DNA from: Macrostomum lignano | Lineage: Eukaryota | Reading direction: 5' to 3' | DNA: 64,000 nucleotides | NCBI GenBank assembly: GCA_002269645.1 | Contig: NIVC01001677.1 | Span: forward strand, 62,001-126,000 | Part shown: positions 11,938 to 59,845 of the stretch, in pieces | How the letters are laid out: each line of letters opens with the position of its first letter | How positions within the stretch are numbered: position 1 is the first letter of the stretch | Notes under the pieces: generated by a model | Told to the model about the DNA's origin: nothing | Seen by the model: the letters and a program-made list of their open reading frames with translations, nothing else | Databases searched by the model: none | Position numbers and translations under genes: made by a program

Positions 11938-25506
<13,569 letters not shown>

Positions 25507-38000: not shown

Positions 38001-38792
38001 TTCTTCTATACTTTATTCAAGAATAGATGTCGTTTTCAATTTTCAGCATGTTATTTAGTCTTTAGTTTCACAGTATGACGTCATAACTAATTGCTACAGC
38101 TCAAGACGCGTCAGATTAATAGACTAAAAATTCATCACGGAATATCAAAGAACTCCAAAGCATTAAACATTCTAACAAAAGTAGCTAAATCGTTTTCGAC
38201 AGACACCCACCTCACTCCCTGATAATTCTTACCCCTCCAAAGACACCCACCTCACTCCCTGATAGTTCTCTACCCCTCCGCAGACACCCACATCACTCCC
38301 TGTTAGTTTCCTACTACTCCATAGACACCCACCTCACCCCCTGATAGTTTTCTACCCCTTCAAAGGCACCCACTTCACTCCTTGATAGTTCTGACCCCTC
38401 CAAAGACACCCACCCCACTCCCTGATAGCTTTCTAACCCTCCGCAGACACCAACTCCACTCCCTGATACCTGATAGTTTCCTACCACTCCATAGACACCC
38501 ACCTCACTCCCTGATAGATGCCTCCAGATCACTGCATAAATTTAAATTTGTCATCATACACAGCTCAGACACTCGAATCCCATACTCATAGGGTTTTGTT
38601 CCCTGTCAATTTGCAGACAACGATCTTGAGTCTGACATCGACTCTGAGCTAGAGAACTCATTCCGGCTTCGACTGAGTGGCGGCGGCACCCTGAAAAGTC
38701 ACCTGACAGCCAGCGGCCAAGTCACACAACAGAAGCCGCCGCCGACGCACGCTGAAGATGAAGACGAAGATTTTGGTGGATTCTACGACTGA
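26055..38792 (+). CDS. KIZ: Kizuna-like centrosomal protein (KIZ/PLK1S1), ~725 aa; exons 26055-26113, 28080-28130, 29093-29626, 30510(or 30519)-30870, 31205-31883, 31972-32094, 37505-37699, 38617-38792
   Basis: N-terminal coiled coil EYLKSTAQLQESILNCESERLNMEQKL and GYYQDLCQRETSMHHRAQQLL match the remembered KIZ N-terminus; central LTGLHCLLDFVD...LWRRLLRH block; SNAYQKLL; acidic end SDIDSELENS...FYD*. Splice phases sum in frame (2178 nt). Confidence 0.8.
27061..27735 (+). CDS. Single-exon hypothetical acidic protein (224 aa, His7 run, basic C-terminal helix) inside Kizuna intron 1
   Basis: Non-repetitive GC3-rich ORF in AT-rich surroundings, ATG to TGA, preceded by cag; its frame is incompatible with inclusion as a KIZ exon. 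Confidence 0.65.
   Translation: MAELSSCQSGPEPSDQSSELDSDDSAFAKTPIRPDDDGDDDSASIASDVSSVSSDASMHFNERGDRTYFHVWSDMLTCNEMTELDLKAETEVPNYVEGDELENPNIHKPLSVDTSLPCPLIQFGPIPKRRSNKKSAASTATDRSDLAGDDTREAEPTENHHHHHHHDDCAEGANEASALSECEGNQQHRDERCCDFSVVAAKNNARHKVEARLRKLERKRLVRY
28264..29037. repeat. 28-bp array (tctgattggtcgggagtcttctgtatga), KIZ intron 2
   Basis: Direct periodicity. Confidence 0.93.
29655..29790 (+). repeat. Dispersed repeat family X
   Basis: Aligns by eye with the reverse complement of 47395-47540 (cacacgctcacacagggtgtac...ccctgacct.atcgtcagg). Confidence 0.65.
30245..30392 (-). mobile_element. tRNA/CORE-like SINE, copy 2 (internally deleted)
   Basis: Near-identical to 14455-14550 plus a truncated head. 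Confidence 0.8.
30975..31156. repeat. 15-bp array (cagtgtcagacagtc), KIZ intron 4
   Basis: Direct periodicity. Confidence 0.93.
32198..32712. repeat. 18-bp array (gatgcttgctatctgggg), KIZ intron 6
   Basis: Direct periodicity. Confidence 0.93.
33210..33677 (-). CDS. CAV: Caveolin, intronless CDS, nested antisense in Kizuna intron 6
   Basis: RDPLKIN, WEEVFGEP (canonical FEDVIAEP), SFDGVWK scaffolding segment, hydrophobic hairpin, LEPL...FSKI C-terminus. Confidence 0.95.
   Translation of the reverse strand: MASSESSSKLQVAESEVHVQMEDESKADVHERDPLKINGDLHVRWEEVFGEPHHTVYSFDGVWKLAHKVYYTVKLWTYRILTLICAVPAACYWGFEFACLACNIIWCWRPALRAFEMQAKMLKLFYSITLSIFLEPLVSTLALCFSKIQVEVVNK
34268..36250. repeat. 45-bp array (ccatagacatcaggctctctctaccttccaactgcactcttagag), ~44 units
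   Basis: Direct periodicity; explains ORF 34915..36201. Confidence 0.95.
36625..37330. repeat. 24-bp array (gttagacagaggatagcgtcacct)
   Basis: Homogeneous centre with diverged edges. Confidence 0.95.
38200..38515 (-). repeat. 39-bp array, left arm of an inverted pair (KIZ intron 7)
   Basis: Units gacacccacctcactccctgatagtttc... are the reverse complement of the 38935-39788 units. Confidence 0.9.
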
Positions 38793-38934
38793 TTTGGGAA
38801 CTAATTGGTCCAGTTTTGTGCCATGATTTGTAGCTAATTATCTTTCAATTAGTCCTTATCGTCACTATCATTCTCGTTCATATATTATTGTAGGAAATTA
38901 ATATATAAATAAGCTGTGAAGGGCAGTAAACGAC

Positions 38935-39788
38935 CAGGGAGTGAGATGGTTGTCTATGGGGGTTGGAAACTATCAGGGAGTGAGATGGGTGTCTATGGGG
39001 GTTGGAAACTATCAGGAAGCGAGATGAGTGTCTATGGGGGTTGGAAACTATCAGGAAGTGAGATGGGTGTCTATGGGGGTTGGAAACTATCAGGGAGTGA
39101 GATGGGTGTCTATGGGGGTTGGAAACTATCAGGAAGTGAGTTGGGTGTCTATGGAGGGGTTGGAAACTATCAGGGAGTGAGATGGGTGTCTATGGAGGGG
39201 TTGGAAACTATCAGGGAGTGAGATGGGTGTCTATGGGGGTTGGAAACTATCAGGAAGTGAGTTGGGTGTCTATGGAGGGGTTGGAAACTATCAGGAAGTG
39301 AGTTGGGTGTCTATGGAGGGGTTGGAAACTATCAGGGAGTGAGATGGGTGTCTATGGGGGTTGGAAACTATCAGGAAGTGAGATGGGTGTCTATGGGGGT
39401 TGGAAACTATCAGGAAGTGAGATGGGTGTCTATGGGGGTTGGAAACTATCAGGGAGTGAGATGGGTGTCTATGGGGGTGGGAAACTATCAGGAAGTGAGA
39501 TGGGTGTCTATGGGGGTTGGAAACTATCAGGAAGTGAGATGGGTGTCTATGGGGGTTGGAAACTATCAGGGAGTGAGATGGGTGTCTATGGGGGTGGGAA
39601 ACTATCAGGAAGTGAGATAAGTGTCTATGGGGGTGGGAAACTACCAGGAAGTGAGATGGGTGTCTATGGGGGTTGGAAACTATCAGGGAGTGAGGTGGGT
39701 GTCTGCAGAGTGGTAGGAAACTATCAGGGAGTGAGATGGGTGTCTTTGGAGGGGTAGGAAACTATCAGGGAGTGGGGCGGGTGTCTTT
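38935..39788 (+). repeat. 39-bp array (ggaaactatcagggagtgagatgggtgtctatgggggtt), right arm of the inverted pair
   Basis: Direct periodicity. Confidence 0.95.
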
Positions 39789-40054
39789 TTTTTAAGAGAA
39801 TTGAAAAGACGCCTGATGGAAGTTTACAAATAAACAAATGTAAACCACCGTTCTGACAATGACAACGTTACAATTTTTATATAAAGCAGGACTTTGTCAC
39901 AATTGTCACAAACATTGTAGGCGAGATGCGGCTTTGTTTTGATTTGAATCGATTTCAGAATACATGTATAATACCATGAGATCGAAGAAAAAATTCGGCC
40001 TTTGTATCAAAGATGCCTAAAGTGGTGTTTATGATGTCCATAAAATTGGTTGTT

Positions 40055-41137: not shown

Positions 41138-44100
41138 TTAATTAGTCGCAGTCGTTTCGTCAACGGCCGTTCCAATCATGGAGGCGTTGTAGTTCTTTAC
41201 CAGATCGGCCCGGTTGAACACCACGGCGTAGACCTTGGGCAGGAACAGGATGCTCACCGCGAACAGGTTGGTGAACAGCAGAACGAAGACCAGCAGAGCG
41301 CCTGCTGACGTCAGCGAGGCCATCGTGACGAGGCTGGGAATGAAGGCGATCCACACGAAGGTGGCGCACGCCGTGAAGGCCAGGATGCACTTGCTGTCGT
41401 GGAAATTGTCCGGCAGGCTGCGAACTCGCACGGCCAGCGAGCACGTGACCAGCATGAGCATCAGGTTGAGCGCGTAGGGAATCCACAGGCTGCTGGAGAA
41501 GTAGTCGCACTGGAACTCCACGACGGGTCTGGCGTCGGATCGGAGACCGTTGAGCAGCAGCTTGACGGGGCGGATCGGACGCGTACTGAGAACGCTGCAC
41601 AGTAGCACCACCTGAGGATTAGAGAGGACAGCTACATCAATGTTTTAGAGCAGCTCGATTCATTCCGATCTCAGCACACACACTCAGCAACATGTTAGAG
41701 AATTTTCGCTCCAAAACCAGCGATTAAACTTCTCTCAGATCTCAGCCCCAAGTGACGCAATTCACGCCACTCCCGCGGCTCTCGACTCAACTGTGGATGA
41801 GGCAATTTGCGCCACAATTGGCCCCAGCTTCCGCTGTTGAGGAGAGAATGGAGAGTTATGGCTAAGAGGTTGGATTAATGCCCGTCTCATCTTTGCATTA
41901 GCGTGAAATAGGTGTAGGATAATGGCATCTGTGCTGGGCAAACTGCATATGCAATGCAATTGTTTAGTATTTTGTGTTGATGTCTTTCAGAATTAGTTCA
42001 ACTAGATTTTGAAGTTCTCGTGAAAACTACATTGTGCTGAAACATTGGCCGCTCTCCTACTATTTTAACTCTACTTTGAACCTGGATGCATTGCTAGAAT
42101 GAATGACGTTGGTAAGAGGTTGCTATCCTCTATATCGGAAGACCTTTTTCGAGAAATTCCCATTCAAATTAAACTACGAAACAAGCAAAATACTCGAAAG
42201 CCTCACAAAGTACACCGAAATCCTAGGCGTGTACCTACTTAGTTTAGCAGTATTTGAGCACAACATTCTCGAGTGTAGGTTGTAAATGGAAAGAACAAAA
42301 ACACTGTACTTTGGTTTACTGACTTTTATTTTTAGGCAGTCTTGTTAAACTAAAAGAAGGCAAGAATTTTTAAATATAAATTCAACCAAGACCACAGAAT
42401 ACTGTCACCCAGACCGTCTTAGTGACCCGGGAAATGTAGGTAGTTCTGCACAGGGGCGTACAGGGGGGACAGGCAGGACATGTCCCCCCAGTAAAAGCAG
42501 TCTTGTGACCTGTTGTGAAAATAAATATTGCAATAATAGTGTTTCAGAGTGCTAAAATATAGCACATGCGGCACCAAAATGAGTGCCTGCGGCGCTAAAA
42601 TGAGAGCCTGTGTCGCCAAAATGAGCGCCGACAACACGGATTTTATTTAGAGTCATGTGCATCTAAATGTAAAATTCTTGGTTTTGTTGCCCCCAACATG
42701 AAATCAATTGCAACCCCCTGCTTCTGCAATAACCGTTAGTTCGAAATAAAGCTGCAATGATAAAAAAGTAACTATTGACTATCCCTCAGCGATCTCGTGG
42801 GCTTTCAATTTCGTATCACTAGTAGAGATGCTATACTGCAGAGCTGCATATATCGAGTCATTACATATAAAGCCAAGATCTAAGCCTAAACTATCGTATA
42901 ACAATCGAGATGTAAAAAGTCCAAATGTTTTCTGACTGATCATTACTCCGCGCAGACGATTGAATTCCTAATTGCAACTGGATCCCACTGACAAAAAATT
43001 GCACAGCACAACGGGCAGACAGATTATTGCAGAAAGAAAGGAGAGTTTTTCATGTACTCTAATATACCATCAATATTGATACTGTCGAAGTCTGTGGACA
43101 AAAAACTGGATAAGCTTTTGGATTGATGCTTTAGCAGAAAAAAACTCACCTGCAACAGGCAAACTACGATTGTCATCACAACCACAGCTTTACGCCCGGT
43201 AAAGCTGAGTCCAGATGCGCCGCGCATGGAGCCCACGAACACGCGGTAGATCCGAGCGCTCTTGGTCAGCAGAGCCGCGTACACCATCGTGAGGCTGAAG
43301 TGGTACAGAAACGCCTGCACGTTGCACACGGTGAGCGACGGCTCGCCGAAGAACAGCGCCACGTCGACGAGTCCGAGCTGGATGCCGACCTGTTGGAACA
43401 CGCTCAGCTCTAGCGAGGACGCCTTCAGCAGCGGCACGTTCGACCTGGCCAAGAAGAACACTCCGGTCGCCATGGTGACCGCAGAGCCGAGCGCCGACAC
43501 GCCGATGAACACGATGCCGCTAGTGTCACTCGGTCGGAGGACGGTCAGCGCGAGCGGCTCGCAGCGAGAGTAGTTCGAGCTCGGCCAGGTAAGCGAGGCG
43601 CACTTCTCGCACAACGTACCGTTCGACCCTACGATCTCGTCGGAGCTGCACGGTCTGCACACCCAGCAGCACTTGCTCACCTGCACTCGGTACTCGCGAT
43701 TGCCGCACGGTAGAGAGCACACACTTGTTGGTACCGAGCGTTGGTCGCTCGCGTCTCCAGGCCACGAGATCAGGCTTCGATTCATGCTGAGACCGTGCTC
43801 AGAGCTCCACACACCGACAGTCACTCTCGAGCTCACCTGTTTGCTGCTCTGGTAGAGCACAACATAGGAAGCGGGACCGTTTCCGTTGCTGTCGAGTTTC
43901 ACCTCTCCCGTGTAGCCGGTGAAGTTCGTTCGGTACAGCTGCCTCAGCAGCAGCGGTCCGGTCACGCAATGCAGCAGCGCCGACTTGTTCAGCCTCGGCT
44001 CCAGGCTGGTTGCGCACTCCGACCTGGCCACCGCGTCGATCGCGTGGGCGAACAAGAGAAACGCGTCCAGCATCCGAGCGACTGGAGCGACAATGCTGGA

Positions 44101-45201
44101 CGGGGTGAAGCTGCTCGACTCGGACACTCGACGAGACGAGTTCGTAGTGCAACAGGCACACGTTGAGCAGTTCATCAGCTGATCAAACATGATTGCACCG
44201 TTGTACATTTTAGAGAGGTCAGAGTAGGTAAGGTTCAGGTACCACTGCATCAAGTCGGGTGTTGGGAACAGGCTGAAGTAGACAGTAAAAGATGCGTTCG
44301 CATAGGCATTGGTGTTATAACCCGTATCGCTAAAGATCAGAATGATGCCAGCCTTGCCAAGAACACTAAAAATATTTTCCGAGGTTCTGCTGACCGAGTT
44401 GAGCCACACCACAGCTTTCATATTCTGCTGAGACTCCACTGTTTCCAGGATCTCGCTGTCCTGTGTTGCGCCAGTGATTGGTATGATGAAGGCCAAGCAG
44501 GCTTCTGGAAATCTAATTGGCAGGCTTGACGAAAACTGCAGGGCTATGTTGGTGAAGTATAAGTTGCTGGCGTCATACACTACGCCGATGTAGGTCCAGT
44601 CGAACTCGCGAGCCAGGTCTATCATGACGACGGCCTGGTAGGAGTCCGGACTCACCAGCCTGACCACGTTGGGAAATCTGGTGCGGTCGCTAAGCGAGTC
44701 ACTGCTGCACTCCGTGCCGACCATGGGGACTTTGAATGGCTGCAAAGCGAACGAAAGAACCTGCGTCTCCGCGCTTGACCAGCCTCCTACAACTCCGTGC
44801 AAAGGCCTCTTCGAGCTGCTGGCAGGCCATGAGGTGCCGTTGCAGCCGCTAGGAATGCCGGTATCAGGCGAGTGACTTTTCCAGGCCGGGGATACTCGAT
44901 TGGCGGCCTCAATGGCCACCGTCTCCTTGTAGCAGGTCTCCAGAAAGGCCAAGCCCAGACTAATGTTGTTTGCACCGAACAGCAGATCCGGCCGAGTTTG
45001 AATTTTCTCCCGAATGAACCGGGGTAGAATCTGTCTCAGTAAGGCTGCTTCAGTGAGGCTGCTCGGACACTGGCCGGTGCCGTGCAGAAGGCCGATTGTG
45101 ATTTCACCGGGCATGCAGTATCCATCGACAGCCTGGCAAACTGGTGTACGCTGTAGTCCCAGCAGTAGCAGTGACAGGATGATCACACCTTTTGATCGCA
45201 T
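41138..45201 (-). CDS. Class C (metabotropic glutamate receptor-like) GPCR, paralog A, ~841 aa; exons 43150-45201 and 41138-41611
   Basis: Signal peptide; Venus flytrap motifs (GGWSSA, LSDRTRFPNVVR, WTYIGVVY); Cys-rich PTSVCSLPC...KCCWVCRPC; 7TM with TKSARIYRVF, PDNFHDSK and LFLPKVY; phase-0 GT-AG intron. Confidence 0.95.
42451..42720. mobile_element. hAT-like MITE, copy 2 (in the GPCR A intron)
   Basis: CAGGGG...CCCCTG termini; 7/8 TSD gttctgca/cttctgca; collinear with 1850-2277. Confidence 0.8.
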
Positions 45202-47394
45202 GCTTTTACCTGGTTTTTTGAGCGGTTAGTTTTTGCGCTTAGTTTTGACGGAGATAAATACGTCATGAGAAAGCCCCGGCTCAAAGTCAAGGCATCACGT
45301 TTTATATCTAGAGCGTTTTATCCACTTTGTCACGCGAATCACCTTTTTATTAGGCGCAATAATCACTGCCATAATCCGCTCCTTTTTCTCGATGGGAACT
45401 CATTCTTCGCAAAGAAAGACTGGTAGCGCCACTTTCTATTGATATTGTTTCGTCCCCGTCCAAAAGGGTGGAGGCTTGAGCCAAAATCGGGGTGCAGGGT
45501 CTGCATCTGCTCAATTTTTTGTGTAGATTGCGGTATACACGAGAGGATAGATTACAATGGATACTCGTATGGCTATTTATATTCGAAGATATCATACGTG
45601 ATTACATTGAATTTAAAAAAGGCTTGTTACTCATGCAAAAACTGTCAGGCAAAAAGCAAGGCTGTCTGCCACAGAGAGACTTACCGATTGTTGTTAGCAA
45701 AAAAAACGCAGCGGACTGCATGACTCGAACCCAGGCGAATCCCTCACTGGTTGGGAAATCCTGTGGGATTTAGTGTTATACCTGACTAATCTCTTGTTCG
45801 GGAGATGGAGGCAGCAAATGGGCCTTGCCCCACTCACTTGCCGGGTGAACTCATTGGCTGGCGAAGGAATGTGTAATGACGTCTCAAAGTCTGTTTCGAG
45901 ACTAACAGTTTATTATTTTACCTTCTCAGATTTTAATCCGCTCTTGGCCAGAAAAAACCCATGTCCAGATTATTGAAATCTTTTCGAATACCTTTAAGCC
46001 AGATTTAATATATATCTATATTACAGTCTTCTAGCTTTGCTTTCTTTCAAAAATCTGAATTTAATTGAAAAACATTTGAGCAGGTGATGGGTGTACGATA
46101 ATTGCCATCCAAGTCTACATTGTACGAGCGTCTATTGTCTAGTGTATCTCACTTCTCGTAGAATGTATCGATTTCTTTGAGTTTTTGCTTGTTACAGTTT
46201 AGTTATTTCCAAGCCGGAAAAGTAACTAAATCGTAGTAAGCATTTGCTCTTTACTCTTGAGGGTTGGGAGAGCAGATTAAGCAAACAGAAAAACCTGTCT
46301 AAACTGAACTCTCAAATGCCATGCAGAGTCGTGAAAGCTGAGCTCTGAAACATCCGATGAAATCGTTAGCATACGGCCTGCATGTATGCAAGTCTTCACC
46401 TCGGGTATTGAGATGCGAATTTGATACAACTTGGTGTCGTTAATCTCTCAAAAGTCGATGCCTATCGAATGCATCGATTCCATTCGCAGAGAGATTGCTT
46501 TCAAACACAAGGATATCATTGAGTAAATGAGCGCTCTTTACGATCGAACGCTAAGACTAATCAAACTAATGATGCTTGAGTCTCGAATTCGCAAGATAAG
46601 GATTCGAGCTCAAGAGCTCTCTTTAACTTTCGTAAGCTAGCTGGCGGTAGCCTTAGCAAGGTTGGGCTTAGCGCGTATTGATTTGTATACTTGTCAACAT
46701 TAACGCAATCGGCCATCAAAGTAGAAGGACTCTGCAGATTTCCTTGGAGGAGTCGGTTTTCGGCTGACAAAATATGCATTAACGAGATTTCTTATTTCAA
46801 CTTTGGCAGTCAATAGGCAGTTTATGGACTTCCGAATTGTATATGGAGGTGTGGCCAAAAAGTAACCAGAATTTTACTTCTGATGCCAGTTTTAAATGCA
46901 CTCCTGGAAGCCCTCCGTCGATATGTCTCCTAATACGCGTACCAGTCTTACCAGTCTTAGGAAATGATGTTTCAGCCTAACATTGCGGCATTGAACGTGC
47001 TTCGTGCGCTGGTGCATTGTCGTGATGCAGCAACCAGGGCATTGTGCTCCTACTGTTAACGTCAAACCCGCCGCATGCTCAACATCAACCTCTCGAGGAC
47101 TTCGCGATAAAAGTGCCGATTCATTGTGACACAAACTCTTGATGTGATCTCTTTTCGCTTTTCCATGATGTGATATACATGTAGGGCTTCATTGACAAAC
47201 TGTTTCTAGATCTGTCTAGAAGCATTATACTAAAGTGATACCAAATTTTGTTGCAACGTTGTTTGCTTCCTGCTCCCCGGTAGAATTTCATAAAAATTAG
47301 TTCGGCAAACATGCAATGCAATCATTGATACGCTCGTACCTCACCCAGCTCGTGTGAATTTAAGATTGGTACAGGCTTGTAAACTGACTAGGGG

Positions 47395-47540
47395 GTTTGC
47401 CGTACAATCCACAGCCATATCATGAGGGCCAGCCTCCAAGGCACAGAGAGTGCACATGCCTGACGATCAGGTCAGGGCCAGTCAGGTCAGGGTCAGTACA
47501 CCCTGTGTGAGCGTGTGTGCCTGCGTGTTGGAGTATTGGC
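47395..47540 (-). repeat. Dispersed repeat family X
   Basis: See 29655-29790. Confidence 0.65.
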
Positions 47541-47969
47541 GCGCTTGCGTGTGCTCAGGAGTCAGAGGAATGGGGCAGAATTGTTTGTAGCTCTGGCTGT
47601 GGGTCGTTGCGCGAGGGTGTCCGCAGCCCTCCTGGGAATATTATTTGCTATTAAACGTACTTTTTCGCTCCAATTGCAATCCAGAAGTCCAGGATGCGAC
47701 AAATCGACAAATAAAGCGATGTGTTTTCAGTGAAGATCGCGCAGTGCAAGAGTGTAGCTAATGCAGCCTTCTGCTTTAGTTGTCAATGGTTGATGTAGTA
47801 GCTAGCATTCCTCTCTTTTTGAATCTGTTGGTAGTAATAGGTATAGCATTTTTACATTTATTTTTGCATGATTTTACTGATTGGATGAGAACTCACACGA
47901 GATATCAGAAGAGCTTTGAACTCACATTACTCTCGTAGCTACAGTTAGTGTACTTTTAGTGTTGCTTAA

Positions 47970-48128
47970 GGGGTTGTAAGCCTAGTGGTTAGAGTGTCGG
48001 ACTCACGACTGAGAGCTTCAGTTCACCCATCTGTAAACTAAGTACCAGCATTAGCTGGGGTAGTCGAGGGTGTGTGTGGCGACCCCCCAGTCCTTGGACT
48101 GAACAGCCGTACGCAGCCTTCAGATGCG
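47970..48128 (+). mobile_element. tRNA/CORE-like SINE, copy 3 (internal deletion)
   Basis: agtggttagagtgtcggactcacgact head and gtccttggactgaacagccgtacgcagccttcagatg tail shared with copy 1. Confidence 0.78.
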
Positions 48129-48727
48129 CCGCGCAATAGCTGCGGCTGAGCTGTCGGTTGCACCTCTGCCCACTAGGGCACGTATAATGATAAAAGTTTA
48201 CTTCAAAAAATCTCAGAGATCCGACGGTGAGATCTCATCCTACTCTCTTATACCAGGTATAACCGATATGGATATCCGGCGCCACGGATTGGGCCGGCCG
48301 CGTGGCGTTCATTCGCGAACTGGCCTTGAGGTGCACCCTGTGACGCTGAACGCGTATTCTATTGTTGTAGTTGTTATAATCGATATCGATTTTCAAACCA
48401 AGCTCGGTGCCTTTCTTTCTATGTACTTTTACTGTACATTTGTGTTTTGCACAATGATCTTTATTTGTTTAAATTCTTGTTCATTACTGTATTTCTTCGG
48501 TAGCATACCATAGTAATACAATAATGTACACTAAGAAACCTTGACGAGATCTCAACGAAAATTAGCATAAGTACATTATCGAGTTAATGGCACTCTCGGA
48601 ATGATTAAATCTATAATCTTCTTTCAGATCTCAACAGAGATCTCATAACCTCCACCCTCTCAGCCCAAATCAAAGATTAGGAATTGACTTTGGCTACTAA
48701 ACAATAATTTGTCTTGATATCCTTGAA

Positions 48728-50045
48728 ATCCCCATGACTGAAATCCCCATGACTGAAATCCCCGTGACTGAAATCCCCGTGACTGAAATCCCCGCGACTC
48801 AAATCCCCGTGACTAGAATCCCCGTGACTGCAATCCCCGTGACTGAAATCCCCGTGACTGAAATCCCCGTGACTGAAATCCCCGTGACTGAAATCCCCGT
48901 GACTGAAATCCCCGTGACTGAAATCCCCATGACTGAAATCCCCGTGACTGAAATCCCCGTGACTGAAATCCCCGCGACTCAAATCCCCGCGACTCAAATC
49001 CCCGTGACTGAAATCCCCGTGACTGAAATCCCCGTGACTGAAATCCCCGTGACTGAAATCCCCGCGACTCAAATCCCCGTGACTGGAATCCCCGTGACTG
49101 CAATCCCCGTGACTGAAATCCCCGTGACTGAAATCCCCATGACTGAAATCCCCGTGACTGAAATCCCCGTGACTGAAATCCCCGCGACTCAAATCCCCGT
49201 GACTGGAATCCCCGTGACTGCAATCCCCGTGACTGAAATCCCCGTGACTGAAATCCCCGTGACTGCAATCCCCGTGACTCAAATCCCCGCGACTCAAATC
49301 CCCGCGACTCAAATCCCCGTGACTGAAATCCCCGTGACTGAAATCCCCGTGACTGCAATCCCCGTGACTGCAATCCCCGTGACTGCAATCCCCGTGACTG
49401 AAATCCCCGTGACTGAAATCCCCGTGACTGCAATCCCCGTGACTGAAATCCCCGTGACTGAAATCCCCGTGACTGAAATCCCCGTGACTGCAATCCCCGT
49501 GACTGAAATCCCCGTGACTGAAATCCCCGTGACTGAAATCCCCGTGACTGAAATCCCCGTGACTGCAATCCCCGTGACTGAAATCCCCGTGACTGCAATC
49601 CCCGTGACTGCAATCCCCGTGACTGCAATCCCCGTGACTGAAATCCCCGTGACTGCAATCCCCGTGACTGAAATCCCCGTGACTGAAATCCCCGTGACTG
49701 GAATCCCGTGACTGAAATCCCCGTGACTGAAATCCCCGTGACTGAAATCCCCGTGACTGAAATCCCCGTGACTGAAATCCCCGTGACTGAAATCCCCGTG
49801 ACTGAAATCCCCGTGACTGAAATCCCCGTGACTGAAATCCCCGTGACTGAAATCCCCGTGACTGAAATCCCCGTGACTGAAATCCCCGTGACTGAAATCC
49901 CCGTGACTGAAATCCCCGTGACTGAAATCCCCGTGACTGAAATCCCCGTGACTGAAATCCCCGTGACTGAAATCCCCGTGACTGAAATCCCCGTGACTGA
50001 AATCCCCGTGACTGAAATCCCATCATTGAAATCCTGGTGATTGAA
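48728..50045. repeat. 15-bp array (gactgaaatccccgt)
   Basis: Direct periodicity; explains four long ORFs. Confidence 0.95.
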
Positions 50046-50477
50046 ATCCCAAAAACTCAAATCCCTGTGACTGAAAAGCCCCGGCTAAGGAGCGCTGTGT
50101 ATGGCCATTGCTCAACCAATCAGGTAAATGTCGAGACTGCACTAGCAAACGCGCACTAGCATGCATACAATTAAAATGGACCTGCTGATGTCGCATCAGA
50201 TTGAAGCTCATTGCTGTATGAGGACGCTTACTAGGCCACACGATAACTGCGTAAGTGAACTGTCAATCTGGAGTAATTACTTCGCTCCTAAATCGTTGCT
50301 AAAATTATAGTCCAATTTTTCAGACACGTACTACAGTGATTCTCGTAGGAACTCTACCGTGACTTTTACTTAGAAAGTGGATTTGTATGAAACTTAACAT
50401 GAAAAGGTTTTACCAAGGTTATAGATTGCGTAACCTTGGCTTCTGCTACATAGGTCTGTTTCTAAAAGCAATTCAGA

Positions 50478-52197
50478 GATAGCTGGCGTCCCCCCTTTAG
50501 CTGGCGCCCCCTCTGTAGCTGGCGCCCCTCTGTAGCTGGCACCCCCTCTGTAACTGGCACCCCTCTGTAGCTGGCGCCCCCTCTGTAGCTGGCACCCCCT
50601 CTGTAGCTGGCGCCCCCTCTGTAGTTGGCGTCCCCCCTTTAGCTAGCGCCCCCACTGTAGCTGGCGTCCCCCCTTTAGCTTGCGCCCCCTCTGTAGCTGG
50701 CACCCCCTCTGTAGCTGGCACCCCCTCCGTAGCTGGCACCCCCTCTGTAGCTGGCGCCCCCTCTGTAACTGGCACCCCTCTGTAGCTGGCGCCCCCTCTG
50801 TAGCTGGCACCCCCTCTGTAGCTGGCACCCCCTCTGTAGCTGGCACCCCCTCTGTAGCTGGCGCCCCCTTTGTAGCTGGCGCCCCTCTGTAGCTTGCGTC
50901 CCCCTTTAGCTAGCGCCCCCTCTGTAGCTGGCACCCCCTGTAGCTGGCGTCCCCCCTTTAGCTGGCGCCCCCTCTGTAGCTGGCGTCCCCCCTTTAGCTG
51001 GCGCCCCCTCTGTAGCTGGCGCCCCTCTGTAGCTGGCACCCCCTCTGTAACTGGCACCCCTCTGTAGCTGGCGCCCCCTCTGTAGCTGGCACCCCCTCTG
51101 TAGCTGGCGCCCCCTCTGTAGCTGGCACCCTCTCTGTAGCTGGCACCCCCACTGTAGCTGGCGTCCCCCCTTTAGCTTGCACCCCCTCTGTAGCTGGCGC
51201 CCCCTCTGTAGCTGGCGCCCCCTCTGTAGCTGGCGTCCCCCCTTTAGCTAGCGCCCCCACTGTAGCTGGCGTCCCCCCTTTAGCTAGCGCCCCCTCTGTA
51301 GCTGGCACCCCCTCTGTAGCTGGCACCCCCTCTGTAGCTGGCACCCCCTCTGTAGCTGGCGCCCCCTCTGTAACTGGCACCCCCTCTGTAGCTGGCACCC
51401 CCTCTGTAGCTGGCGCCCCCTTTGTAGCTGGCGCCCCCTCTGTAGCTTGCGTCCCCCCTTTAGCTAGCGCCCCCTCTGTAGCTGGCACCCCCTGTAGCTG
51501 GCACCCCCTCTGTAGCTGGCGCCCCCTCTGTAACTGGCACCCCCTCTGTAGCTGGCACCCCCTCTGTAGCTGGCGCCCCCTTTGTAGCTGGCGCCCCCTC
51601 TGTAGCTTGCGTCCCCCCTTTAGCTAGCGCCCCCTCTGTAGCTGGCACCCCCTGTAGCTGGCGTCCCCCCTTTAGCTGGCGCCCCCTCTGTAGCTGGCGT
51701 CCCCCTTTAGCTGGCGCCCCCTCTGTAGCTGGCGCCCCTCTGTAGCTGGCACCCCCTCTGTAACTGGCACCCCTCTGTAGCTGGCGCCCCCTCTGTAGCT
51801 GGCACCCCCTCTGTAGCTGGCGCCCCCTCTGTAGCTGGCACCCTCTCTGTAGCTGGCACCCCCACTGTAGCTGGCGTCCCCCCTTTAGCTTGCGCCCCCT
51901 CTGTAGCTGGCGCCCCCTCTGTAGCTGGCGCCCCCTCTGTAGCTGGCGTCCCCCCTTTAGCTAGCGCCCCCACTGTAGCTGGCGTCCCCCCTTTAGCTAG
52001 CGCCCCCTCTGTAGCTGGCACCCCTCTGTAGCTGGCGCCCCCTCTGTAGCTGGCACCCCCTCTGTAGCTGGCGCCCCCTTTGTAGCTGGCGCCCCCTCTG
52101 TAGCTGGCACCCCCTCTGTAGCTGGCACCCCCTCTGTAGCTGGCGCCCCCTTTGTAGCTGGCGCCCCCTCTGTAGCTGGCACCCCCACTGTAGCTGA
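50478..52197. repeat. ~18-21-bp array (tgtagctggcgccccctc) with block-level duplications
   Basis: Direct periodicity. Confidence 0.95.
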
Positions 52198-52972
52198 CGG
52201 ATTCGACCTTGTGATCCAGATGGAAATATCATATTTTTGTCATGAAATGAAGAATTTTTTATTGCTCAAGTAATATAATCTTCGTGCCATGTCGATTAAA
52301 ATTTACCGGGGCAGCTGAAGATGCCACAGGCAATTTGAGGATGAAATGAAACGAAAGATTTTGCAATTAGCACCCAGCATTTTGGCACAGGCAATTAAAT
52401 GGATGCCTTGATTTTAGGGCTAATTAGCTTTTAGCCCGGAGGAAACTGCTGCGCATGGCTGCTGTCTCTGGATGCCTCTGGCTAACAAATAACTTCAAAA
52501 TGGAACTGAGATTTTGCTGGAAGCTAAAAAATGATCGATGAAATGGAACAGCGAGAAAGCAGGACATGGTGGTCCCTGCTAACAAGGCAAATTTGTCTGT
52601 CAATGCTTATTACACTTGTTTAATATTTCATGACAGCTAGCTGCCTTAAGCGTCATACTCCTCGACACTTTTAAGATTTAAGTCAGATATGAAACATTCG
52701 TACAATATATTTAGCTATCGTCGAAAGAACACTAAGTCCGGAAAGTTTTTCTCAAATTAGCATAAATAAAAATCAGAGTGAAAATTTATGCCCGCTTGAA
52801 TTCGCTTTAAGATCTGGCACTATGATGAGGAAGGAGTCTCACTAATTACGGTTTTCTTACTTTCCTCCCCATTACAAAGGCAAAGAAATTGGACTTCTGA
52901 AACTTCAACGGTCGAATAGGTTACCACCATTAATCAGGCAACTTCAAAGCGTCAAAAATACCAACGACTCGG

Positions 52973-55900
52973 ATGCTTTCCTCTGTCCTATGGGTGCTGC
53001 TAATCTGGTTCTCAGTAGCGACGGCAGACGACACGCCAAAAGTAGACGGCTACTGCCAAGCAGGAGACTTCATGCTGGTCGGACTGCACGGATCGAGCTA
53101 TTGCACTGGCCACCCAACGGAGTCCGAGTACCTGCGTCAGGTTGCGCCCCATTTCTTACGAAGAAAGTTGGCAGCGAAGCCGGGCACAATATTCAGCCAG
53201 AGTGAAAACCTCACTTTAGGAGTCGTTTTTCTCGACACCTGCTTCTCCGAGGCTAAAGGTGCCGCTGTTGCGAGTCGAGTTCGAGCTGCTTGGAGACGTC
53301 CAGCTCTGTTGGAAACTGGAGACCGGTGCAGTATGCTCAATGGCATAGATCCCGACCCGGTGTACCTGGTGCACGGCGTGATCGGCGGCTGGTCCAGCGC
53401 TGTCACACAGACGATGCTGTTCCCGTTGCAGAACGAAGCTCTGCCCACAGTCGGAACCGAGTGCAGCAGCGACTCGCTCAGCGATCGAGTTCGGTTCCCC
53501 AACTTTGTACGACTGGTGAGTCCGGACTCATATCAAGCGATGGTGATCATCGACCTGCTCCGCGAGTTCAACTGGACGTACATCGGTCTGCTCTACGATC
53601 CAGGAAGTGTCTACAACACAAACATCGCTCTTCAGTTGTCATCCAGTCTTCCAGGCCGATTTCCTAGCGCCTGTTTTGCGTTCATTATTCCGATGACTAG
53701 CAACACAGAACCAATGGAGTTAAAAGAGGCTATAAAACAGAAGCCAAACTTGCGAGCTCTGATTTGGCTGAAGGACGTTAATGACAACTTGAAAAGCGTC
53801 GACTTACTAAAAGCAGTTGGAAGGACTGGAGTGTTTGTCATAATGGCGGATGAGAACTACAATCAAAATATCTATACAAACAACTCCTTCACCGTCTACT
53901 TCAATATGTTCCCAACACCCGACTTGATGCAGTGGTACCTGAACCTTACCTACTCTGACCTCTCTAAGATGTACAACGGTGCAATCATGTTTGATCAGCT
54001 GATGAACTGCTCAACGTGTGCCTGTTGCACTACGAACTCGTCTCGTCGAGTGTCCGAGTCGAGCAGCTTCACCCCGTCCAGCATTGTCGCTCCAGTCGCT
54101 CGGATGCTGGACGCGTTTCTCTTGTTCGCCCACGCGATCGACGCGGTGGCCAGGTCGGAGTGCGCGACCAGCCTGGAGCCGAGGCTGAACAAGTCGGCGC
54201 TGCTGCAGTGCGTGACCGGACCGCTGCTGCTGAGGCAGCTGTACCGAACGAACTTCACCGGCTACACGGGAGAGGTGAAGCTCGACAGCAATGGAAACGG
54301 TCCCGCTTCCTATGTTGTGCTCTACCAGAGCAGCAAACAGGTGAGCTCGAGAGTGACTGTCGGTGTGTGGAGCTCTGAGCACGGTCTCAGCATGAATCGA
54401 AGCCTGATCTCGTGGCCTGGAGACGCGAGCGACCAACGCTCGGTACCAACGAGTGTGTGCTCTCTACCGTGCGGCAATCGCGAGTACCGAGTGCAGGTGA
54501 GCAAGTGCTGCTGGGTGTGCAGACCGTGCAGCTCCGACGAGATCGTAGGTCGAACGGTACGTTGTGCGAAAGTGCGCCTCGCTTACCTGGCCGAGCTCGA
54601 ACTACTCTCGCTGCGAGCCGCTCGCGCTGACCGTCCTCCGACCGAGTGACACTAGCGGCATCGTGTTCATCGGCGTGTCGGCGCTCGGCTCTGCGGTCAC
54701 CATGGCGACCGGAGTGTTCTTCTTGGCCAGGTCGAACGTGCCGCTGCTGAAGGCGTCCTCGCTAGAGCTGAGCGTGTTCCAACAGGTCGGCATCCAGCTC
54801 GGACTCGTCGACGGCGCTGTTCTTCGGTGAGCCGTCGCTCACCGTGTGCAACGTGCAGGCGTTTCTGTACCACTTCAGCCTCACGATGGTGTACGCGGCT
54901 CTGCTGACCAAGAGCGCTCGGATCTACCGCGTGTTCGTGGGCTCCATGCGCGGCACATCTGGACTGAAATTCACAGGGCGCAGGGCTGTAGTTGTCATGA
55001 CAATTGCAGTTTGTATGTTGCAGGTGAGACATTTATGAAACGCAATTCTATTTTGAAAAATGCGTATTTTTTTTCAATTGAATAGTCTTTTTCAAGTTAC
55101 GTCAACAGTGGTATGATACAGACACAGAAGCCGTCTGAAGGCAAACTTCCGTTCTCTGCTTGGTTGCAAGGGAGCGTTAATATCTTTGTAATCGGCAAAT
55201 CTTGGATGAAGTCGCTGACAAGATCACTATTGACTGGGTATACAAATGAAAAAGGAGCTGCTGCTGCTGCTGCTGTTTTTATCGATCGAATTGAGTAATC
55301 ACATTAGGCAGTTCGTGGCAGTTTTTTCAAAGCTGACAAAGTCCGAGTCTTCAAGCAATTGCCGACTACAAGCAGCTCCAACGTGTCATATCGTCTTCCA
55401 ATGCATAACGATAAAGTACGTTTTCGGTTGAAAGTTTCGCTAGAAAGCTCAATACTCAATTAGAACTGCCTAAATTCAGTCTTTGCTCGTACTTCCTAAT
55501 AAGTATCCTAACTTCTTCCTCCTTTTTCGTTTGTTTTGCTGCTCAATACGGTTGTAAATTTAAGAAGTTCCATATTGAGTAGGAAAAGGCTTCGTCAGCC
55601 AAAGAGTCTGCTAGGTGAACCCGGGAGCAAACTTGGCAGCTTACTTATCGAGGTGCGGGGTCCATAGTTCACTTTTTGGAGGTTGGAAACGTGATACGAG
55701 CTAAGTAGTGCTTTGGGATTAAGGGATTAATAAAGCAGAGGATAATGACTCCGTGCTACTTTACTAGGCAAGAGTTTAGGCCTTGTCCTAGCTCCAAATT
55801 GAGTGGCAAAGGATGCTGTTTCAGCCTCCTAATTTAACCGGATAAACCAGAACCTGATCGTCAAAAACCTGGACGATGAAAAATTTTACAACCTTTTTAA

Positions 55901-56552
55901 GCCGGAACTTGTTCTTTAAGAATCTATTTCCAGGAGTACAACGTCGTTTGCTTAAGCCTTATTTTTAAAATTGCAAAAAAGTATTTTCCAAGTGCTTCTG
56001 TCTCATAATCCAACACAGCACTGTGCGATCATACTGAACGCACTGCATAACACATCACTCTGTAGCATCTACCTGAACCTTCACGACACTCAGGTGGTGC
56101 TTCTGTGCAGCGTTCTCAGTACGCGTCCGATCCGCCCCGTCAAGCAGCTGCTCAACGGCCTCCGATCCGACGCCAGACCCGTCGTGGAGTTCCAGTGCGA
56201 CTACTTCTCCAGCAGCCTGTGGATTCCGTACGCGCTCAACCTGCTGCTCATGCTGGTCACGTGCTCGCTGGCCGTGCGAGTTCGCAGCCTGCCGGACAAT
56301 TTCCACGACAGCAAGTGCATCCTGGCCTTCACGGCGTGCGCCACCTTCGTGTGGATCGCCTTCATTCCCAGCCTCGTCACGATGGCCTCGCTGACGTCAG
56401 CAGGCGCTCTGCTGATCTTCGTTCTGCTTTTCACCAACCTGTTCGCGGTGAGCATCCTGTTCCTGCCCAAGGTCTACGCCGTTGTGTTCGATAAGTCCGA
56501 CAACGCCAAGCACTACAACAACAGTGTATTGGACGCCACAGGGACACAGTAG
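52973..56552 (+). CDS. Class C GPCR, paralog B; exons 52973-55023 and 56094-56552; three small deletions relative to A (~54550, ~54570, ~54811) shift the frame, so either a pseudogene or consensus error
   Basis: Same domain order and intron position as paralog A; restoring 4 nt gives an intact frame. Confidence 0.88.
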
Positions 56553-57764: not shown

Positions 57765-59845
57765 TGTTGTAAATGCTGCGTCGCTCTCTTTCCCCTTGGC
57801 TCTGGTTGGCCGATGGGCCAGGCCGGGGTTTGGGGGCGCACGTCTCACCCCGGCCTGACCTACGTTCTGTTCAGTTTTCTTCTCTGCCCTGTGCCGCGGC
57901 GGCTTGTGATTGGCTGTCTGGTGGGGTGGGAGTGTGGGAGTGGCTGTCCGCTTGCTGCCCGTCCCCCTGGCCCCTCCCCTTCTGCTATTTAAAGAGCGCG
58001 CCTTGACCCAACCCGTGTTCCAAGGGTCTACGACGTTTGCCTGCGGGACGTTTGCCAGCCGACGTTTGCCAGCCGACGTTTGCCAGCCGACGTTTGCCAG
58101 CCGACGTTTGCCAGCCGACGTTTGCCTGCCGAAAGTTTGCCAGCTAAAATTTGCTAGCCAATAAAGCGTATAAAGTATAAAGCCAGTCAGTGAAAAATTT
58201 GATACTGAAATATTCGCAGTTTAGCGGTTTGACAAAAACCGTTTTTACTCCAACTTTTTGACGGTTATTTGCATATATACAAGTTTGAAAGCAAAATATA
58301 TATAAATTATGCAATTTATTAGTCTAACATCTAATATCTAGTTTAATAACGATTTTCTTTTAATGTGAAAATATAGTTTACTTAAGTTTTGACAATTGTG
58401 TATCCTTTTTTCTAGTTTGAGATGTTTGATTTTTGATGTGCGAAAGAAGACGCGCAGATTAAAACGGGAATCTCCAGCGATTTAAGGTATGAAGCAAACA
58501 AAAAGAGCTGCTGAGCGGTAATTCTGGCTCATATATTTCTCAGTTCATTGGGAGATCCGAAAGTAAGCAAATTGATTCCAATGCTGTTGTATTACTACTC
58601 AAGTAAGCCAGGAAATCGCGATCTCAACGTACATGTGTAGACGAGTCGAATGCGGTAGGTTTGTATAGTAAGCTAGCTGAATAGCCAGACAAGCCGCCAG
58701 TAGCAAGAACTAGTAGGATAGCAAGCGCTAGACACTTCGTATACAAAGCTTAGTCACGCCAAGGACTACTAAAGTAGAAGGACGCGCAGCACTCGAAATC
58801 TATGGAAAATGTTTTGAAGGCCATAGGGAGATAGGAAGTTTTCATCTTTTCAGCACAACAATTGTTATTGCTTTCATACGAGGCAAACCCATGAATGTTC
58901 ATCTTTTGATATGTTGTGCCAAAATCGTTGATAGCTCGTAAACTAGGTATTGCGTTAGACTAATGAACTGCATAGTTTATATAGATTTTGCTTTCGAACT
59001 TGTATATATGCAAATAACCGTCAAAAAGTTTGAGTAAAAACGGTTGTTGTCAAACCGTTAAACTGCGAATATTTCAGTATCAAATTTTTCACTGACTGGC
59101 TTTATATTGGCTAGCAAATTTTAGCTGGCAAACTTCCAGCAGGCAAACATCGGCTGGCAAACTTCGGCTGGCAAACATCCCGCAGGCAAACGTCCGGCAG
59201 GCAAACTTCGGCTGGCAAACGTCTCGCAGGCAAACGTCGGCTGGCAAACGTCGGCTGGCAAATGTCGACTGGCAAATGTCGGCTGGCAAACGTCCCGCAG
59301 GCAAACGTCTGGCAGGCAAACTTCGGCTGGCAAACGTCCCGCAGGCAAACGTCGGCTGGCAAACGTCGGCTGGCAAATGTCGGCTGGCAAACGTCCCGCA
59401 GGCAAACGTCGGCTGGCAAACGTCGGCTGGCAAACGTCGGCTGGCAAATGTCGGCTGGCAAACGTCCCGCAGGCAAACGTCGGCTGGCAAACGTCCCGCA
59501 GGCAAACGGCGCTATCCCTGTTCCAAACCACTTGCTCTCGTGTGGCCGTGCGAAAACAGTGCAACTCAGTTTAATACTTCACACATCGTGGCCAGTAGAC
59601 CGCGGTCTGTTGCGCACTTCTGTTGTGACCAAAGTTTTGTGTGCAAATAGTACGAGTTCTCTTTCTCTTTGGGGCACCTGTGAACTCTCGCAGTAGTAGT
59701 ACCGGCCCGTTGCGGCGGTGCTAGGCTCGGGAAGCGCTGCGAACTTGAATAGCATCGAGCGTTTCCCTCTTCGGCGGCGCTTAGGCCCCTATACCCCACG
59801 CAGCTGCTTGCGTGTCTCTTTGGGCCGTCCCTGGGGGATACAACA
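57765..59845. mobile_element. Possible solo LTR (TGTTGTA...TACAACA) interrupted by the foldback element
   Basis: 7-bp inverted TG...CA termini and a TATA-like tatttaaa; no TSD found. Confidence 0.4.
58024..59518. mobile_element. Foldback-type non-autonomous DNA transposon with long modular TIRs
   Basis: Perfect 8-bp TSD TGTTCCAA (58016-58023, 59519-59526); GGG...CCC termini; inverted 14-bp arrays followed by ~200 bp of unique inverted sequence; no ORF inside. Confidence 0.88.

What the first reader, a model, noticed from the sequence alone, without database searches (positions are those of the whole stretch)
41138..56552. Divergent class C GPCR pair: variable ligand-binding N-terminus on a homogenised constant region
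Seen: A (-) and B (+) start 7.8 kb apart. Their first ~310 residues are clearly diverged, then become almost letter-identical abruptly at tgttcccaac (A 44270 to 43219; B 53907-54954). They diverge again ~70 nt before the donor and across the intron, and are near-identical again for most of exon 2 (A 41611 to ~41225; B 56094 to ~56485), with different tails. The homogenised tracts are more GC3-rich. Established: inverted paralogs can undergo gene conversion. Inference: exon-restricted conversion, possibly mRNA/cDNA-templated or from a larger family, keeps the Cys-rich/7TM module constant while the flytrap sensor diversifies. This suggests an expandable chemosensory receptor system in a probable flatworm.
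Basis: partly seen in the sequence, partly recalled or inferred. Interest (0 to 1): 0.82.

Follow-up and report, generated by a model that had tools for sequence, protein, structure and literature searches.

The report
Partly homogenised inverted glutamate-receptor-like gene pair
Two old, head-to-head copies of a metabotropic-glutamate-receptor-like gene share two almost identical coding blocks, the usual mark of gene conversion between neighbouring paralogs, and one copy is broken by frameshifts as assembled.

Summary
Genes A (-, 45201..41138) and B (+, 52973..56552) are two-exon class C GPCRs with a Venus-flytrap (VFT), a nine-cysteine domain (CRD) and seven transmembrane helices (7TM). They start 7,772 nt apart.

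- **Diverged parts:** the first 310 codons have 47% amino-acid identity and saturated synonymous sites (pS 0.74). Introns and both flanks cannot be aligned.
- **Near-identical blocks:** A 44270-43219 / B 53907-54954 (dS 0.024) and A 41611-41223 / B 56094-56482 (dS 0.041). A diverged 68-nt exon-1 end (dS 0.82) and the intron separate them.
- **Statistics:** third-position differences are 11/476 inside the blocks against 219/354 outside (p 2.5e-89). GC3 is 0.82 inside against about 0.62 outside.

The best reading is ordinary regional interlocus gene conversion, probably recurrent and GC-biased. The same pattern is published for fugu protocadherins, vasopressin/oxytocin exon 2 and fish OlfC receptors.

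- B carries three frameshifting deletions (-1, -1, -2) inside block 1, so it is a pseudogene or mis-assembled.
- Block 1 begins inside the flytrap (residue 311 of 78-449), not at a domain border.
- Nothing supports an mRNA template, because block 1 stops short of the exon junction and both introns remain.

The flatworm origin and a larger family could not be tested. This is a new member of a known kind, of modest interest.

The parts
43150..45201 (-). Gene A exon 1: 684 codons, phase 0. Encodes the signal peptide, flytrap (VFT), nine-cysteine domain (CRD), TM1-TM3 and the start of TM4.
   Evidence: ORF. Donor CAG|GTGAG. Pfam domains. The homologous exon end is found in relative L001.
41612..43149 (-). 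Gene A intron, 1538 nt, GT..AG. No similarity to the B intron.
41138..41611 (-). Gene A exon 2: 157 codons plus stop, covering TM4-TM7 and a short tail. The spliced product is 841 aa.
52973..55023 (+). Gene B exon 1: 2051 nt, frame broken. As assembled, the ORF from the ATG stops at 54649 (558 aa).
55024..56093 (+). Gene B intron, 1070 nt, GT..AG.
56094..56552 (+). Gene B exon 2: 152 codons plus stop, intact.
43219..44270 (-). Homogenised block 1, copy in A (residues 311-661): the last third of the flytrap, the CRD and TM1-TM3.
   Evidence: 99.3% nt identity to B, dS 0.024, GC3 0.81
53907..54954 (+). Homogenised block 1, copy in B.
41223..41611 (-). Homogenised block 2, copy in A (residues 685-813): TM4-TM7. 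It starts exactly at the splice acceptor.
   Evidence: 98.2% nt identity, dS 0.041, GC3 0.88
56094..56482 (+). Homogenised block 2, copy in B.
43150..43218 (-). Unconverted last 23 codons of A exon 1. The B counterpart is 54955-55023. This stretch keeps the old divergence.
   Evidence: 78% nt identity, dS 0.82, GC3 0.44-0.52
54547..54548 (+). B frameshift 1: 1-nt deletion relative to A (GTAGGGTCG becomes GTAGGTCG).
   Evidence: A's frame is the one that matches homologues.
54569..54570 (+). B frameshift 2: 1-nt deletion (GCGAGAAGTG becomes GCGAAAGTG).
54812..54813 (+). B frameshift 3: 2-nt deletion (GACGTGGCG becomes GACGGCG). The net shift over all three is -4.
45202..52972 (.). Spacer of 7.8 kb between the two start codons. 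It holds minisatellites at 48724-50076 (15-mer, 90 copies) and 50480-52196 (18-mer, 96 copies). The two promoter sides share no similarity.

Best explanation
A and B are ancient head-to-head paralogs of an mGluR-like class C GPCR. Two blocks of their coding sequence have been overwritten recently, and probably repeatedly, by ectopic (interlocus) gene conversion between the inverted copies.

**Inferred mechanism.** A break in one copy is repaired from the other copy. The converted tract can spread only while the two sequences still pair. It therefore stops where homology is already lost: the intron, the diverged N-terminal part and the 3' ends.
- This gives one block in exon 1 and a separate block in exon 2.
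- It leaves the last 68 nt of exon 1 untouched.
- Once a block is identical it stays the preferred substrate, so its edges stay sharp.
- Repeated GC-biased repair raises GC3 inside the blocks.
- Inverted orientation lets this go on without deleting the locus, because a crossover would only invert the spacer.

**Result.** Two different N-terminal two-thirds of the flytrap are joined to the same flytrap C-terminal third, CRD and 7TM.

**Status of B.** B has three frameshifts in block 1. It is either a very recent pseudogene (or a pseudogene kept similar by A-to-B conversion) or it carries assembly indel errors.

**Shown:** the mosaic, its statistics, the GC3 shift, the domain content and the frameshifts.
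**Inferred:** the repair mechanism, recurrence, direction, and any benefit to sensing.
For: - **Mosaic divergence.** pS is 0.74 in the N-terminal 310 codons, and dS is 0.82 and 1.3 in the exon-1 end and the tail. In the two blocks dS is 0.024 and 0.041.
- **Significance.** Third-position differences are 11/476 against 219/354, p 2.5e-89. The run-length permutation test gave 0 of 20,000 shuffles reaching the observed run.
- **Old paralogs.** Introns, 5' flanks and 3' flanks have no detectable similarity. The copies are therefore old and the intron was not co-transferred.
- **GC3.** It is 0.82-0.83 inside the blocks against 0.60-0.64 outside, and 0.50-0.76 in other ORFs of the window. Published conversion cases use the same signature (PMC1852091; PMC2315648).
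- **Two real sequences.** The 14 substitutions inside the blocks split 10 synonymous to 4 non-synonymous. P(4 or fewer of 14) is 3e-4 if they were random with respect to codon position. They are filtered mutations of two distinct sequences, not consensus noise.
- **Gene model.** Pfam and solved mGluR structures support it. A 28%-identical relative has the same exon-1 end.
Against: - Only two sequences are available, so the classical proof (incongruent N- and C-terminal trees with orthologues or further paralogs) could not be made.
- The donor could be a third family member outside the window.
- GC3 is uneven inside block 1: 0.60-0.77 in its first 100 codons and 0.83-0.93 in the 7TM part. Part of the GC3 shift may therefore reflect membrane-domain codon usage.
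- It is unclear how conversion began between sequences whose unconverted parts are only 69-78% identical. This requires either continuous homogenisation since the duplication or a more similar intermediate donor.
- No reads were available to exclude an assembly or polishing effect.
Confidence: 0.8

Rival explanations
1. Family-wide concerted evolution. The shared blocks come from, or circulate among, many dispersed class C paralogs elsewhere in the genome. A and B are just two recipients of a common constant module.
For: - Raised GC3 inside the blocks suggests many rounds of exchange rather than one.
- The unconverted parts are too diverged (69-78% nt) for easy direct pairing, so a stepping-stone donor is attractive.
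- A related two-exon family is multi-copy in another unidentified eukaryote: three members lie on different contigs of one ENA assembly.
Against: - No third copy or fragment lies in the 64-kb window, even at tblastn E 10.
- No near-identical sequence exists in any searchable collection.
- This is a variant of the main explanation rather than a true alternative.
Confidence: 0.3
2. The homogenisation is templated by spliced mRNA or cDNA, which would explain why it is confined to exons.
For: Block 2 starts exactly at the splice acceptor. Only the consensus CTCAG is shared upstream. Introns are wholly unrelated while exon blocks are 98-99% identical.
Against: - Block 1 stops 68 nt before the exon junction, so the homogenised sequence does not run across the junction as a cDNA copy would.
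- Both genes keep their intron.
- Three of the four block edges lie inside exons.
- An edge at the exon border is expected for DNA-templated repair as well, because homology ends there.
Confidence: 0.04
3. Assembly or polishing artefact. Reads of one copy were used to correct the other, making already similar exons look nearly identical. The three B deletions are consensus errors of the same process.
For: - All three B indels fall within 266 nt of block 1 and bracket a 244-nt stretch of perfect identity.
- Frameshifts occur nowhere else in either gene.
- Differences inside the blocks are mostly synonymous, which fits a still-functional B whose frameshifts are not real.
Against: - Cross-mapping needs high prior similarity, yet the adjacent unconverted coding sequence is only 55-78% identical.
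- The blocks still carry 14 substitutions with a biological synonymous bias.
- Block edges coincide with an intron border and are sharp.
- The window has no Ns or gaps.
- The artefact could explain the indels (about even odds) but hardly the blocks themselves.
Confidence: 0.07
4. Recent whole-gene duplication followed by very fast adaptive divergence of the ligand-binding part only.
For: It would give a diverged sensor on a conserved signalling part without any exchange.
Against: - Synonymous sites of the N-terminal part are saturated (pS 0.74) while dN/dS there is low, about 0.15.
- Introns, promoters and 3' flanks are unalignable.
- A 68-nt island with dS 0.82 sits between the two blocks.
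Confidence: 0.01

Closest known systems
Regional gene conversion in teleost clustered protocadherin variable exons (fugu, PMC1852091; Noonan et al. 2004, cited there)
   Same: Paralogs are told apart by divergent 5' (N-terminal ectodomain) sequence. They share a 3' region more than 99% identical at the nucleotide level, synonymous sites included, and GC3 is significantly higher in the homogenised part. Here identity is 98-99% and GC3 is 0.82 against 0.62.
   Different: The protocadherin cases involve many tandem, same-strand paralogs within one large exon. Here there are only two known copies, in inverted orientation, with two blocks split by an intron. The N-terminal divergence is also much deeper: 47% amino-acid identity against about 80% for the one fugu subcluster whose value was read.
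Vasopressin/oxytocin exon-2 conversion (Ruppert et al. 1984; discussed in PMC2315648)
   Same: These are neighbouring paralogous genes in which one internal coding exon is kept nearly identical while the other exons and most intron sequence differ. Conversion there is described as restricted, or nearly so, to coding sequence. That the mammalian pair lies in opposite orientation is from my own knowledge, not from the paper passages read.
   Different: In cattle the identity runs 135 bp into the intron. Here it stops at the acceptor. The gene family is different, and the mammalian pair is tail-to-tail rather than head-to-head (own knowledge).
Gene conversion among fish OlfC (V2R-like) class C chemoreceptors (PMC6588630)
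   Same: It is the same receptor superfamily (flytrap, Cys-rich domain, 7TM), and GENECONV-detected exchange among recently expanded paralogs is reported.
   Different: A and B are closer to mGluRs than to CaSR or T1R in the PDB search; OlfC/V2R proteins were not compared directly. The two-exon gene structure also differs from the multi-exon OlfC/V2R genes (the OlfC/V2R structure is own knowledge). No expression or chemosensory evidence exists here.
Metabotropic glutamate receptors, groups II/III (solved structures of mGluR4, 6, 7, 3, 2)
   Same: The domain order is the same, with nine CRD cysteines and a full 7tm_3 match. E-values are 1e-52 to 1e-67. Residues aligning with the alpha-amino-acid contacts of mGluR1 (R78, S165, T188 as Ser, D208, Y236, D318; numbering from memory) are kept in both A and B.
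   Different: Identity is only 26-30%. The position aligning with mGluR1 K409, which holds the distal carboxylate of glutamate, is not Lys. The C-terminal tail is very short. The ligand is unknown.

Membership tests
Class C (glutamate-family) GPCR | N-terminal periplasmic-binding-protein-like Venus flytrap domain | tested here: met
   PF01094 ANF_receptor, E 2.8e-33, residues 78-449 of A. It aligns to mGluR ectodomain structures.
Class C (glutamate-family) GPCR | Nine-cysteine linker domain (NCD3G) | tested here: met
   PF07562, E 5e-9, residues 490-540. The score of 36.3 bits is just under the 38.9 cut-off. All nine Cys are present in VCSLPC...SRCEP.
Class C (glutamate-family) GPCR | 7tm_3 heptahelical domain, complete | tested here: met
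   PF00003, E 1.2e-40, profile positions 3-251 of 251, residues 557-810 of spliced A. In B the domain is out of frame as assembled.
Metabotropic glutamate receptor proper | Full set of glutamate-contact residues, including the distal-carboxylate Lys (mGluR1 K409) | tested here: inconclusive
   Proximal contacts appear conserved, but the K409-equivalent is Ala/Pro in a weakly aligned stretch. Residue numbering is from memory. Identity is only 26-30%.
Interlocus (ectopic) gene conversion / concerted evolution | Runs of identity between paralogs far longer than the overall divergence allows | tested here: met
   A run of 123 identical third positions against a maximum of 48 in 20,000 shuffles. 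Fisher p 2.5e-89.
Interlocus (ectopic) gene conversion / concerted evolution | Synonymous divergence sharply heterogeneous along the gene, with old divergence in flanks and introns | tested here: met
   dS is 0.024 and 0.041 in the blocks against 0.82, 1.3 and saturation elsewhere. Introns and flanks are unalignable.
Interlocus (ectopic) gene conversion / concerted evolution | Region-specific tree incongruence against orthologues or further paralogs | not testable with these tools
   Only two copies are known. No close relative appears in any collection.
Interlocus (ectopic) gene conversion / concerted evolution | GC3 enrichment of converted tracts (GC-biased repair); supportive, not obligatory | tested here: met
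   GC3 is 0.82-0.83 against 0.60-0.64, p 1e-9 and 2e-13. Enrichment is uneven within block 1.
cDNA/mRNA-templated conversion | Homogenised tract continuous across the exon-exon junction, or intron loss | tested here: not met
   A 68-nt diverged island lies before the donor, and both introns are retained.
Functional two-receptor sensor pair | Both copies have intact reading frames | tested here: not met
   A is intact at 841 aa. B has deletions of 1, 1 and 2 nt and stops at 54649. Whether these are real or assembly errors cannot be told without reads.

The most novel reading that the evidence does not exclude
The two exon-confined blocks are copies of a 'constant module' that is spread among many dispersed flytrap-receptor genes. 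Spread would be by exchange limited to processed (exonic) sequence, possibly through a cDNA intermediate. New sensor heads could then be plugged onto one signalling body. Frameshifted copies such as B would serve as reservoirs or as secreted flytrap-only decoys.
Probability: 0.05. Interest if true: 0.75.

Novelty: new member of a known kind. Interest (0 to 1): 0.33.

Why it matters
The locus is a clean, small example of how gene conversion can hold the signalling part of a receptor constant while the ligand-binding part drifts apart. It lies in an invertebrate mGluR-like lineage with no characterised close relative.

In practice it matters for annotation and phylogeny. Trees built on the 7TM part would wrongly date this duplication as recent. 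Copy B needs read-level checking before it is called a gene or a pseudogene. It does not open a new mechanism.

Tried and rejected
- **Further copies in the window:** tblastn at E 10 and blastn found none.
- **Similarity of introns and flanks:** none above chance.
- **Close relatives for region-specific trees:**
  - the word-indexed protein search gave only three hits, at about 26% identity;
  - the exhaustive HMMER search peaked at 35% identity, over partial stretches;
  - the metagenome scan with block-1 peptides found nothing.
- **Identifying the organism:**
  - caveolin and ELAPOR-like ORF searches gave no hits;
  - Rfam and tRNA scans gave none;
  - cluster names gave only Priapulus, Bulinus, Ostrinia and Polypterus at 29-35%;
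  - the ENA accession of the nearest relatives is in no paper;
  - the flatworm claim stays untested.
- **Recent duplication plus fast adaptive divergence:** rejected, because synonymous sites are saturated and non-coding sequence is unrelated.
- **Foldback or palindrome assembly chimera:** rejected, because the arms are identical only in parts of exons.
- **Structure prediction:** not run. The tools return no coordinates, so A/B differences could not be mapped to the binding cleft.
Full report
**1. The observation**

The inverted-repeat search between 38 and 60 kb returns four long arm pairs lying in the two genes: 683 nt at 97%, 244 nt at 100%, 216 nt at 93% and 431 nt at 95%. A global alignment of the two loci read base by base reproduces every coordinate in the finding.

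- Near-identity begins at TGTTCCCAAC (A 44270 / B 53907).
- It runs to A 43219 / B 54954 and ends 68 nt before the GTGAG donors.
- It is absent across the introns.
- It resumes exactly at the acceptor (A 41611 / B 56094) and ends near A 41223 / B 56482.
- The start codons are 7,772 nt apart.

**2. The genes**

A is a two-exon gene.
- Exon 1 is 45201..43150 (684 codons, phase 0).
- The intron is 1538 nt.
- Exon 2 is 41611..41138.
- The product is 841 aa.

Pfam finds ANF_receptor (residues 78-449, E 3e-33), NCD3G (490-540, nine cysteines) and a full 7tm_3 (557-810, E 1e-40). Solved mGluR4/6/7/3/5/2 structures match at E 1e-52 to 1e-67. CaSR (about 1e-32 to 1e-34) and T1R3 (about 6e-21) match far more weakly.

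The exhaustive HMMER search gives mostly about 30% identity for the best relatives, up to 35% over partial stretches. The named ones are mGluR-like proteins of Priapulus, Bulinus and Ostrinia, plus a fused CaSR model of Polypterus.

A 28%-identical relative on an ENA contig has the same layout. A 717-aa first ORF ends ...LMQ|GTAAA at the position homologous to A's ...LLQ|GTGAG, and a 7tm_3 ORF lies 0.5 kb downstream. Two more members on other contigs of the same assembly show a similar ~715-aa first ORF followed by a downstream 7tm_3 ORF. The gene model and intron position are therefore sound.

Other genes in the window (caveolin, an ELAPOR1-like gene and an RGS exon) show that the source is an animal. 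The phylum could not be determined.

**3. Is the pattern more than chance?**

Codon-level rates are and identities.

| Segment | Amino-acid identity | Nucleotide identity | Synonymous | Non-synonymous |
|---|---|---|---|---|
| N-terminal 310 codons | 47% | 55% | pS 0.74 (saturated) | dN 0.48 |
| Block 1 (347 codons) | 99.7% | 99.3% | dS 0.024 | dN 0.001 |
| Last 23 codons of exon 1 | 78% | 78% | dS 0.82 | dN 0.13 |
| Block 2 (129 codons) | 97.7% | 98.2% | dS 0.041 | dN 0.011 |
| Tail | 44% | 57% | dS 1.3 | dN 0.54 |

- Third-position differences are 11/476 inside the blocks against 219/354 outside (Fisher p 2.5e-89).
- The longest run of identical third positions is 123, against a maximum of 48 in 20,000 permutations.
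- Introns, promoter sides and 3' flanks share nothing above chance.
- No third copy lies in the window.

**4. GC3**

GC3 inside the blocks is 0.82-0.83. It is 0.60-0.64 in the rest of the two genes (p 1e-9 and 2e-13) and 0.50-0.76 in other ORFs of the window. The unconverted 23 codons between the blocks drop to 0.44-0.52.

The enrichment is uneven. It is 0.60-0.77 in the first hundred codons of block 1 and 0.83-0.93 in the 7TM part. Amino-acid or codon usage of membrane segments may therefore contribute.

**5.

Inside block 1, B lacks three stretches relative to A:
- 1 nt at 54547/8;
- 1 nt at 54569/70;
- 2 nt at 54812/3.

A's frame is the one that aligns with homologues through this region, so these are deletions in B. 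The net shift is -4. B's frame from the ATG stops at 54649, giving a 558-aa product: signal peptide, flytrap, part of the CRD and 33 out-of-frame residues.

The end of exon 1 and exon 2 are open only in the ancestral frame. B is therefore a pseudogene as assembled, or the assembly has indel errors.

Arguments that the lesions are very recent or not real:
- B's 525 upstream codons and its exon 2 are intact.
- The 14 substitutions inside the blocks split 10 synonymous to 4 non-synonymous. P is 3e-4 against codon-blind change, and 0.012 against a model in which only B drifts neutrally.
- All three indels sit within 266 nt and bracket a 244-nt perfectly identical stretch.

Without reads this cannot be settled. 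I put it at roughly even odds.

**6. Where the block edges lie**

- Block 1 starts at residue 311, well inside the flytrap (78-449).
- By alignment with mGluRs this is near the point where the chain returns from lobe 2 to lobe 1. This placement rests on lobe limits recalled from the mGluR1 structure, so it is approximate.
- The 'constant' part is therefore the C-terminal third of the flytrap, the CRD, TM1-TM3, and then TM4-TM7. The 'variable' part is the N-terminal half of lobe 1 plus most of lobe 2.
- Most residues aligning with the mGluR1 ligand contacts fall in the variable part.
- The proximal alpha-amino-acid contacts (R78, S165, T188 as Ser, D208, Y236, D318 equivalents) are conserved and identical in A and B. 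Neighbouring positions differ, and the K409 equivalent is not Lys (numbering from memory).
- This fits two amino-acid-like sensors with different side-chain pockets, but that is inference only.

**7. Mechanism**

The data fit ordinary interlocus gene conversion between inverted paralogs.
- The tracts are bounded by loss of homology. This explains why block 2 begins at the acceptor: the introns do not pair.
- It also explains why there are two separate blocks.
- The raised GC3 points to repeated GC-biased events rather than a single one.
- An identical block remains the best recombination substrate, which keeps its edges sharp.
- Inverted orientation protects the pair from deletion by unequal crossing-over.

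The cDNA-template idea is not supported. The homogenised sequence does not cross the exon junction (a 68-nt island at dS 0.82), both introns persist, and three of the four edges lie inside exons.

A donor elsewhere in the genome cannot be excluded.

An in-silico artefact is unlikely for the blocks. The neighbouring coding sequence is only 55-78% identical, and the residual differences carry a selective signature. An artefact remains plausible for the three indels.

**8. Comparison with known cases**

- **Fugu protocadherins.** The pattern matches regional conversion in this cluster: divergent 5', more than 99% identical 3', and significantly higher GC3 (PMC1852091).
- **Vasopressin/oxytocin.** This is the classic case of exon-2 conversion (PMC2315648).
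- **Fish OlfC.** Conversion is also reported among these class C chemoreceptors (PMC6588630).
- **What is particular here.** The background divergence is deep, the orientation is head-to-head, the homogenised region is split around an intron, and one copy is broken.

**9. Verdict**

This is a new instance of a known process in an uncharacterised invertebrate mGluR-like gene pair. The functional story (an expandable chemosensory system), the flatworm origin and the RNA-template idea are untested or unsupported.

Noticed in passing
whole window, e.g. 8111-8661, 9235-10386, 18361-19341, 34275-36207, 48724-50076, 50480-52196: Minisatellite density is extreme. TRF gives 51 rows, with units of 4-47 nt in arrays of 0.3-2 kb every few kb. 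Many arrays create long spurious ORFs on both strands.
   Followed up: partly
window 14700-22800 (-): These look like exons of an ELAPOR1-like gene. The hits are the MRH_ELAPOR1_9th domain (E 1e-13) and weak TNFR/ephrin-receptor-like Cys-rich repeats. A protein search with one exon found no relatives.
   Followed up: partly
window 33210-33677 (-): A single-ORF caveolin gene (PF01146, E 4e-35) shows that the source is an animal. The word-indexed search found no homologue.
   Followed up: partly
window 4411-5285 (+): The C-terminal part of an RGS domain (E 3e-11) lies in an ORF that runs in frame out of a 45/86-nt minisatellite. The exon probably starts near 5050.
   Followed up: no
window 13290-13829: A (TAGGGC)n-like array of about 83 units resembles a degenerate interstitial telomere-type repeat.
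   Followed up: no
window 38200-39790 and 58030-59510: Each GPCR gene has, 1.5-3 kb past its 3' end, a pair of locally inverted minisatellite blocks. The two sets are unrelated to each other.
   Followed up: partly
window ~42550-42720 (A intron) and 1984-2277: A segment of the A intron is 70-91% similar to a short repeat array near the start of the window, so it is probably a dispersed repeat.
   Followed up: no
L001 10001-13228; L002 10001-15901; L003 10001-17068: Three 28-30%-identical relatives sit on different contigs of one ENA assembly (ERZ26222911). All show a ~715-aa first ORF followed by a 7tm_3 ORF 0.5-4.4 kb downstream, so this gene type is multi-copy in another unidentified eukaryote.
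   Followed up: partly
window 52973-54649 (+): As assembled, B would encode a 558-aa secreted flytrap plus partial Cys-rich domain without 7TM. A 7TM-less glutamate-binding protein is described in Schistosoma mansoni (PMC3206071, seen). There is no evidence that B's truncation is functional.
   Followed up: no
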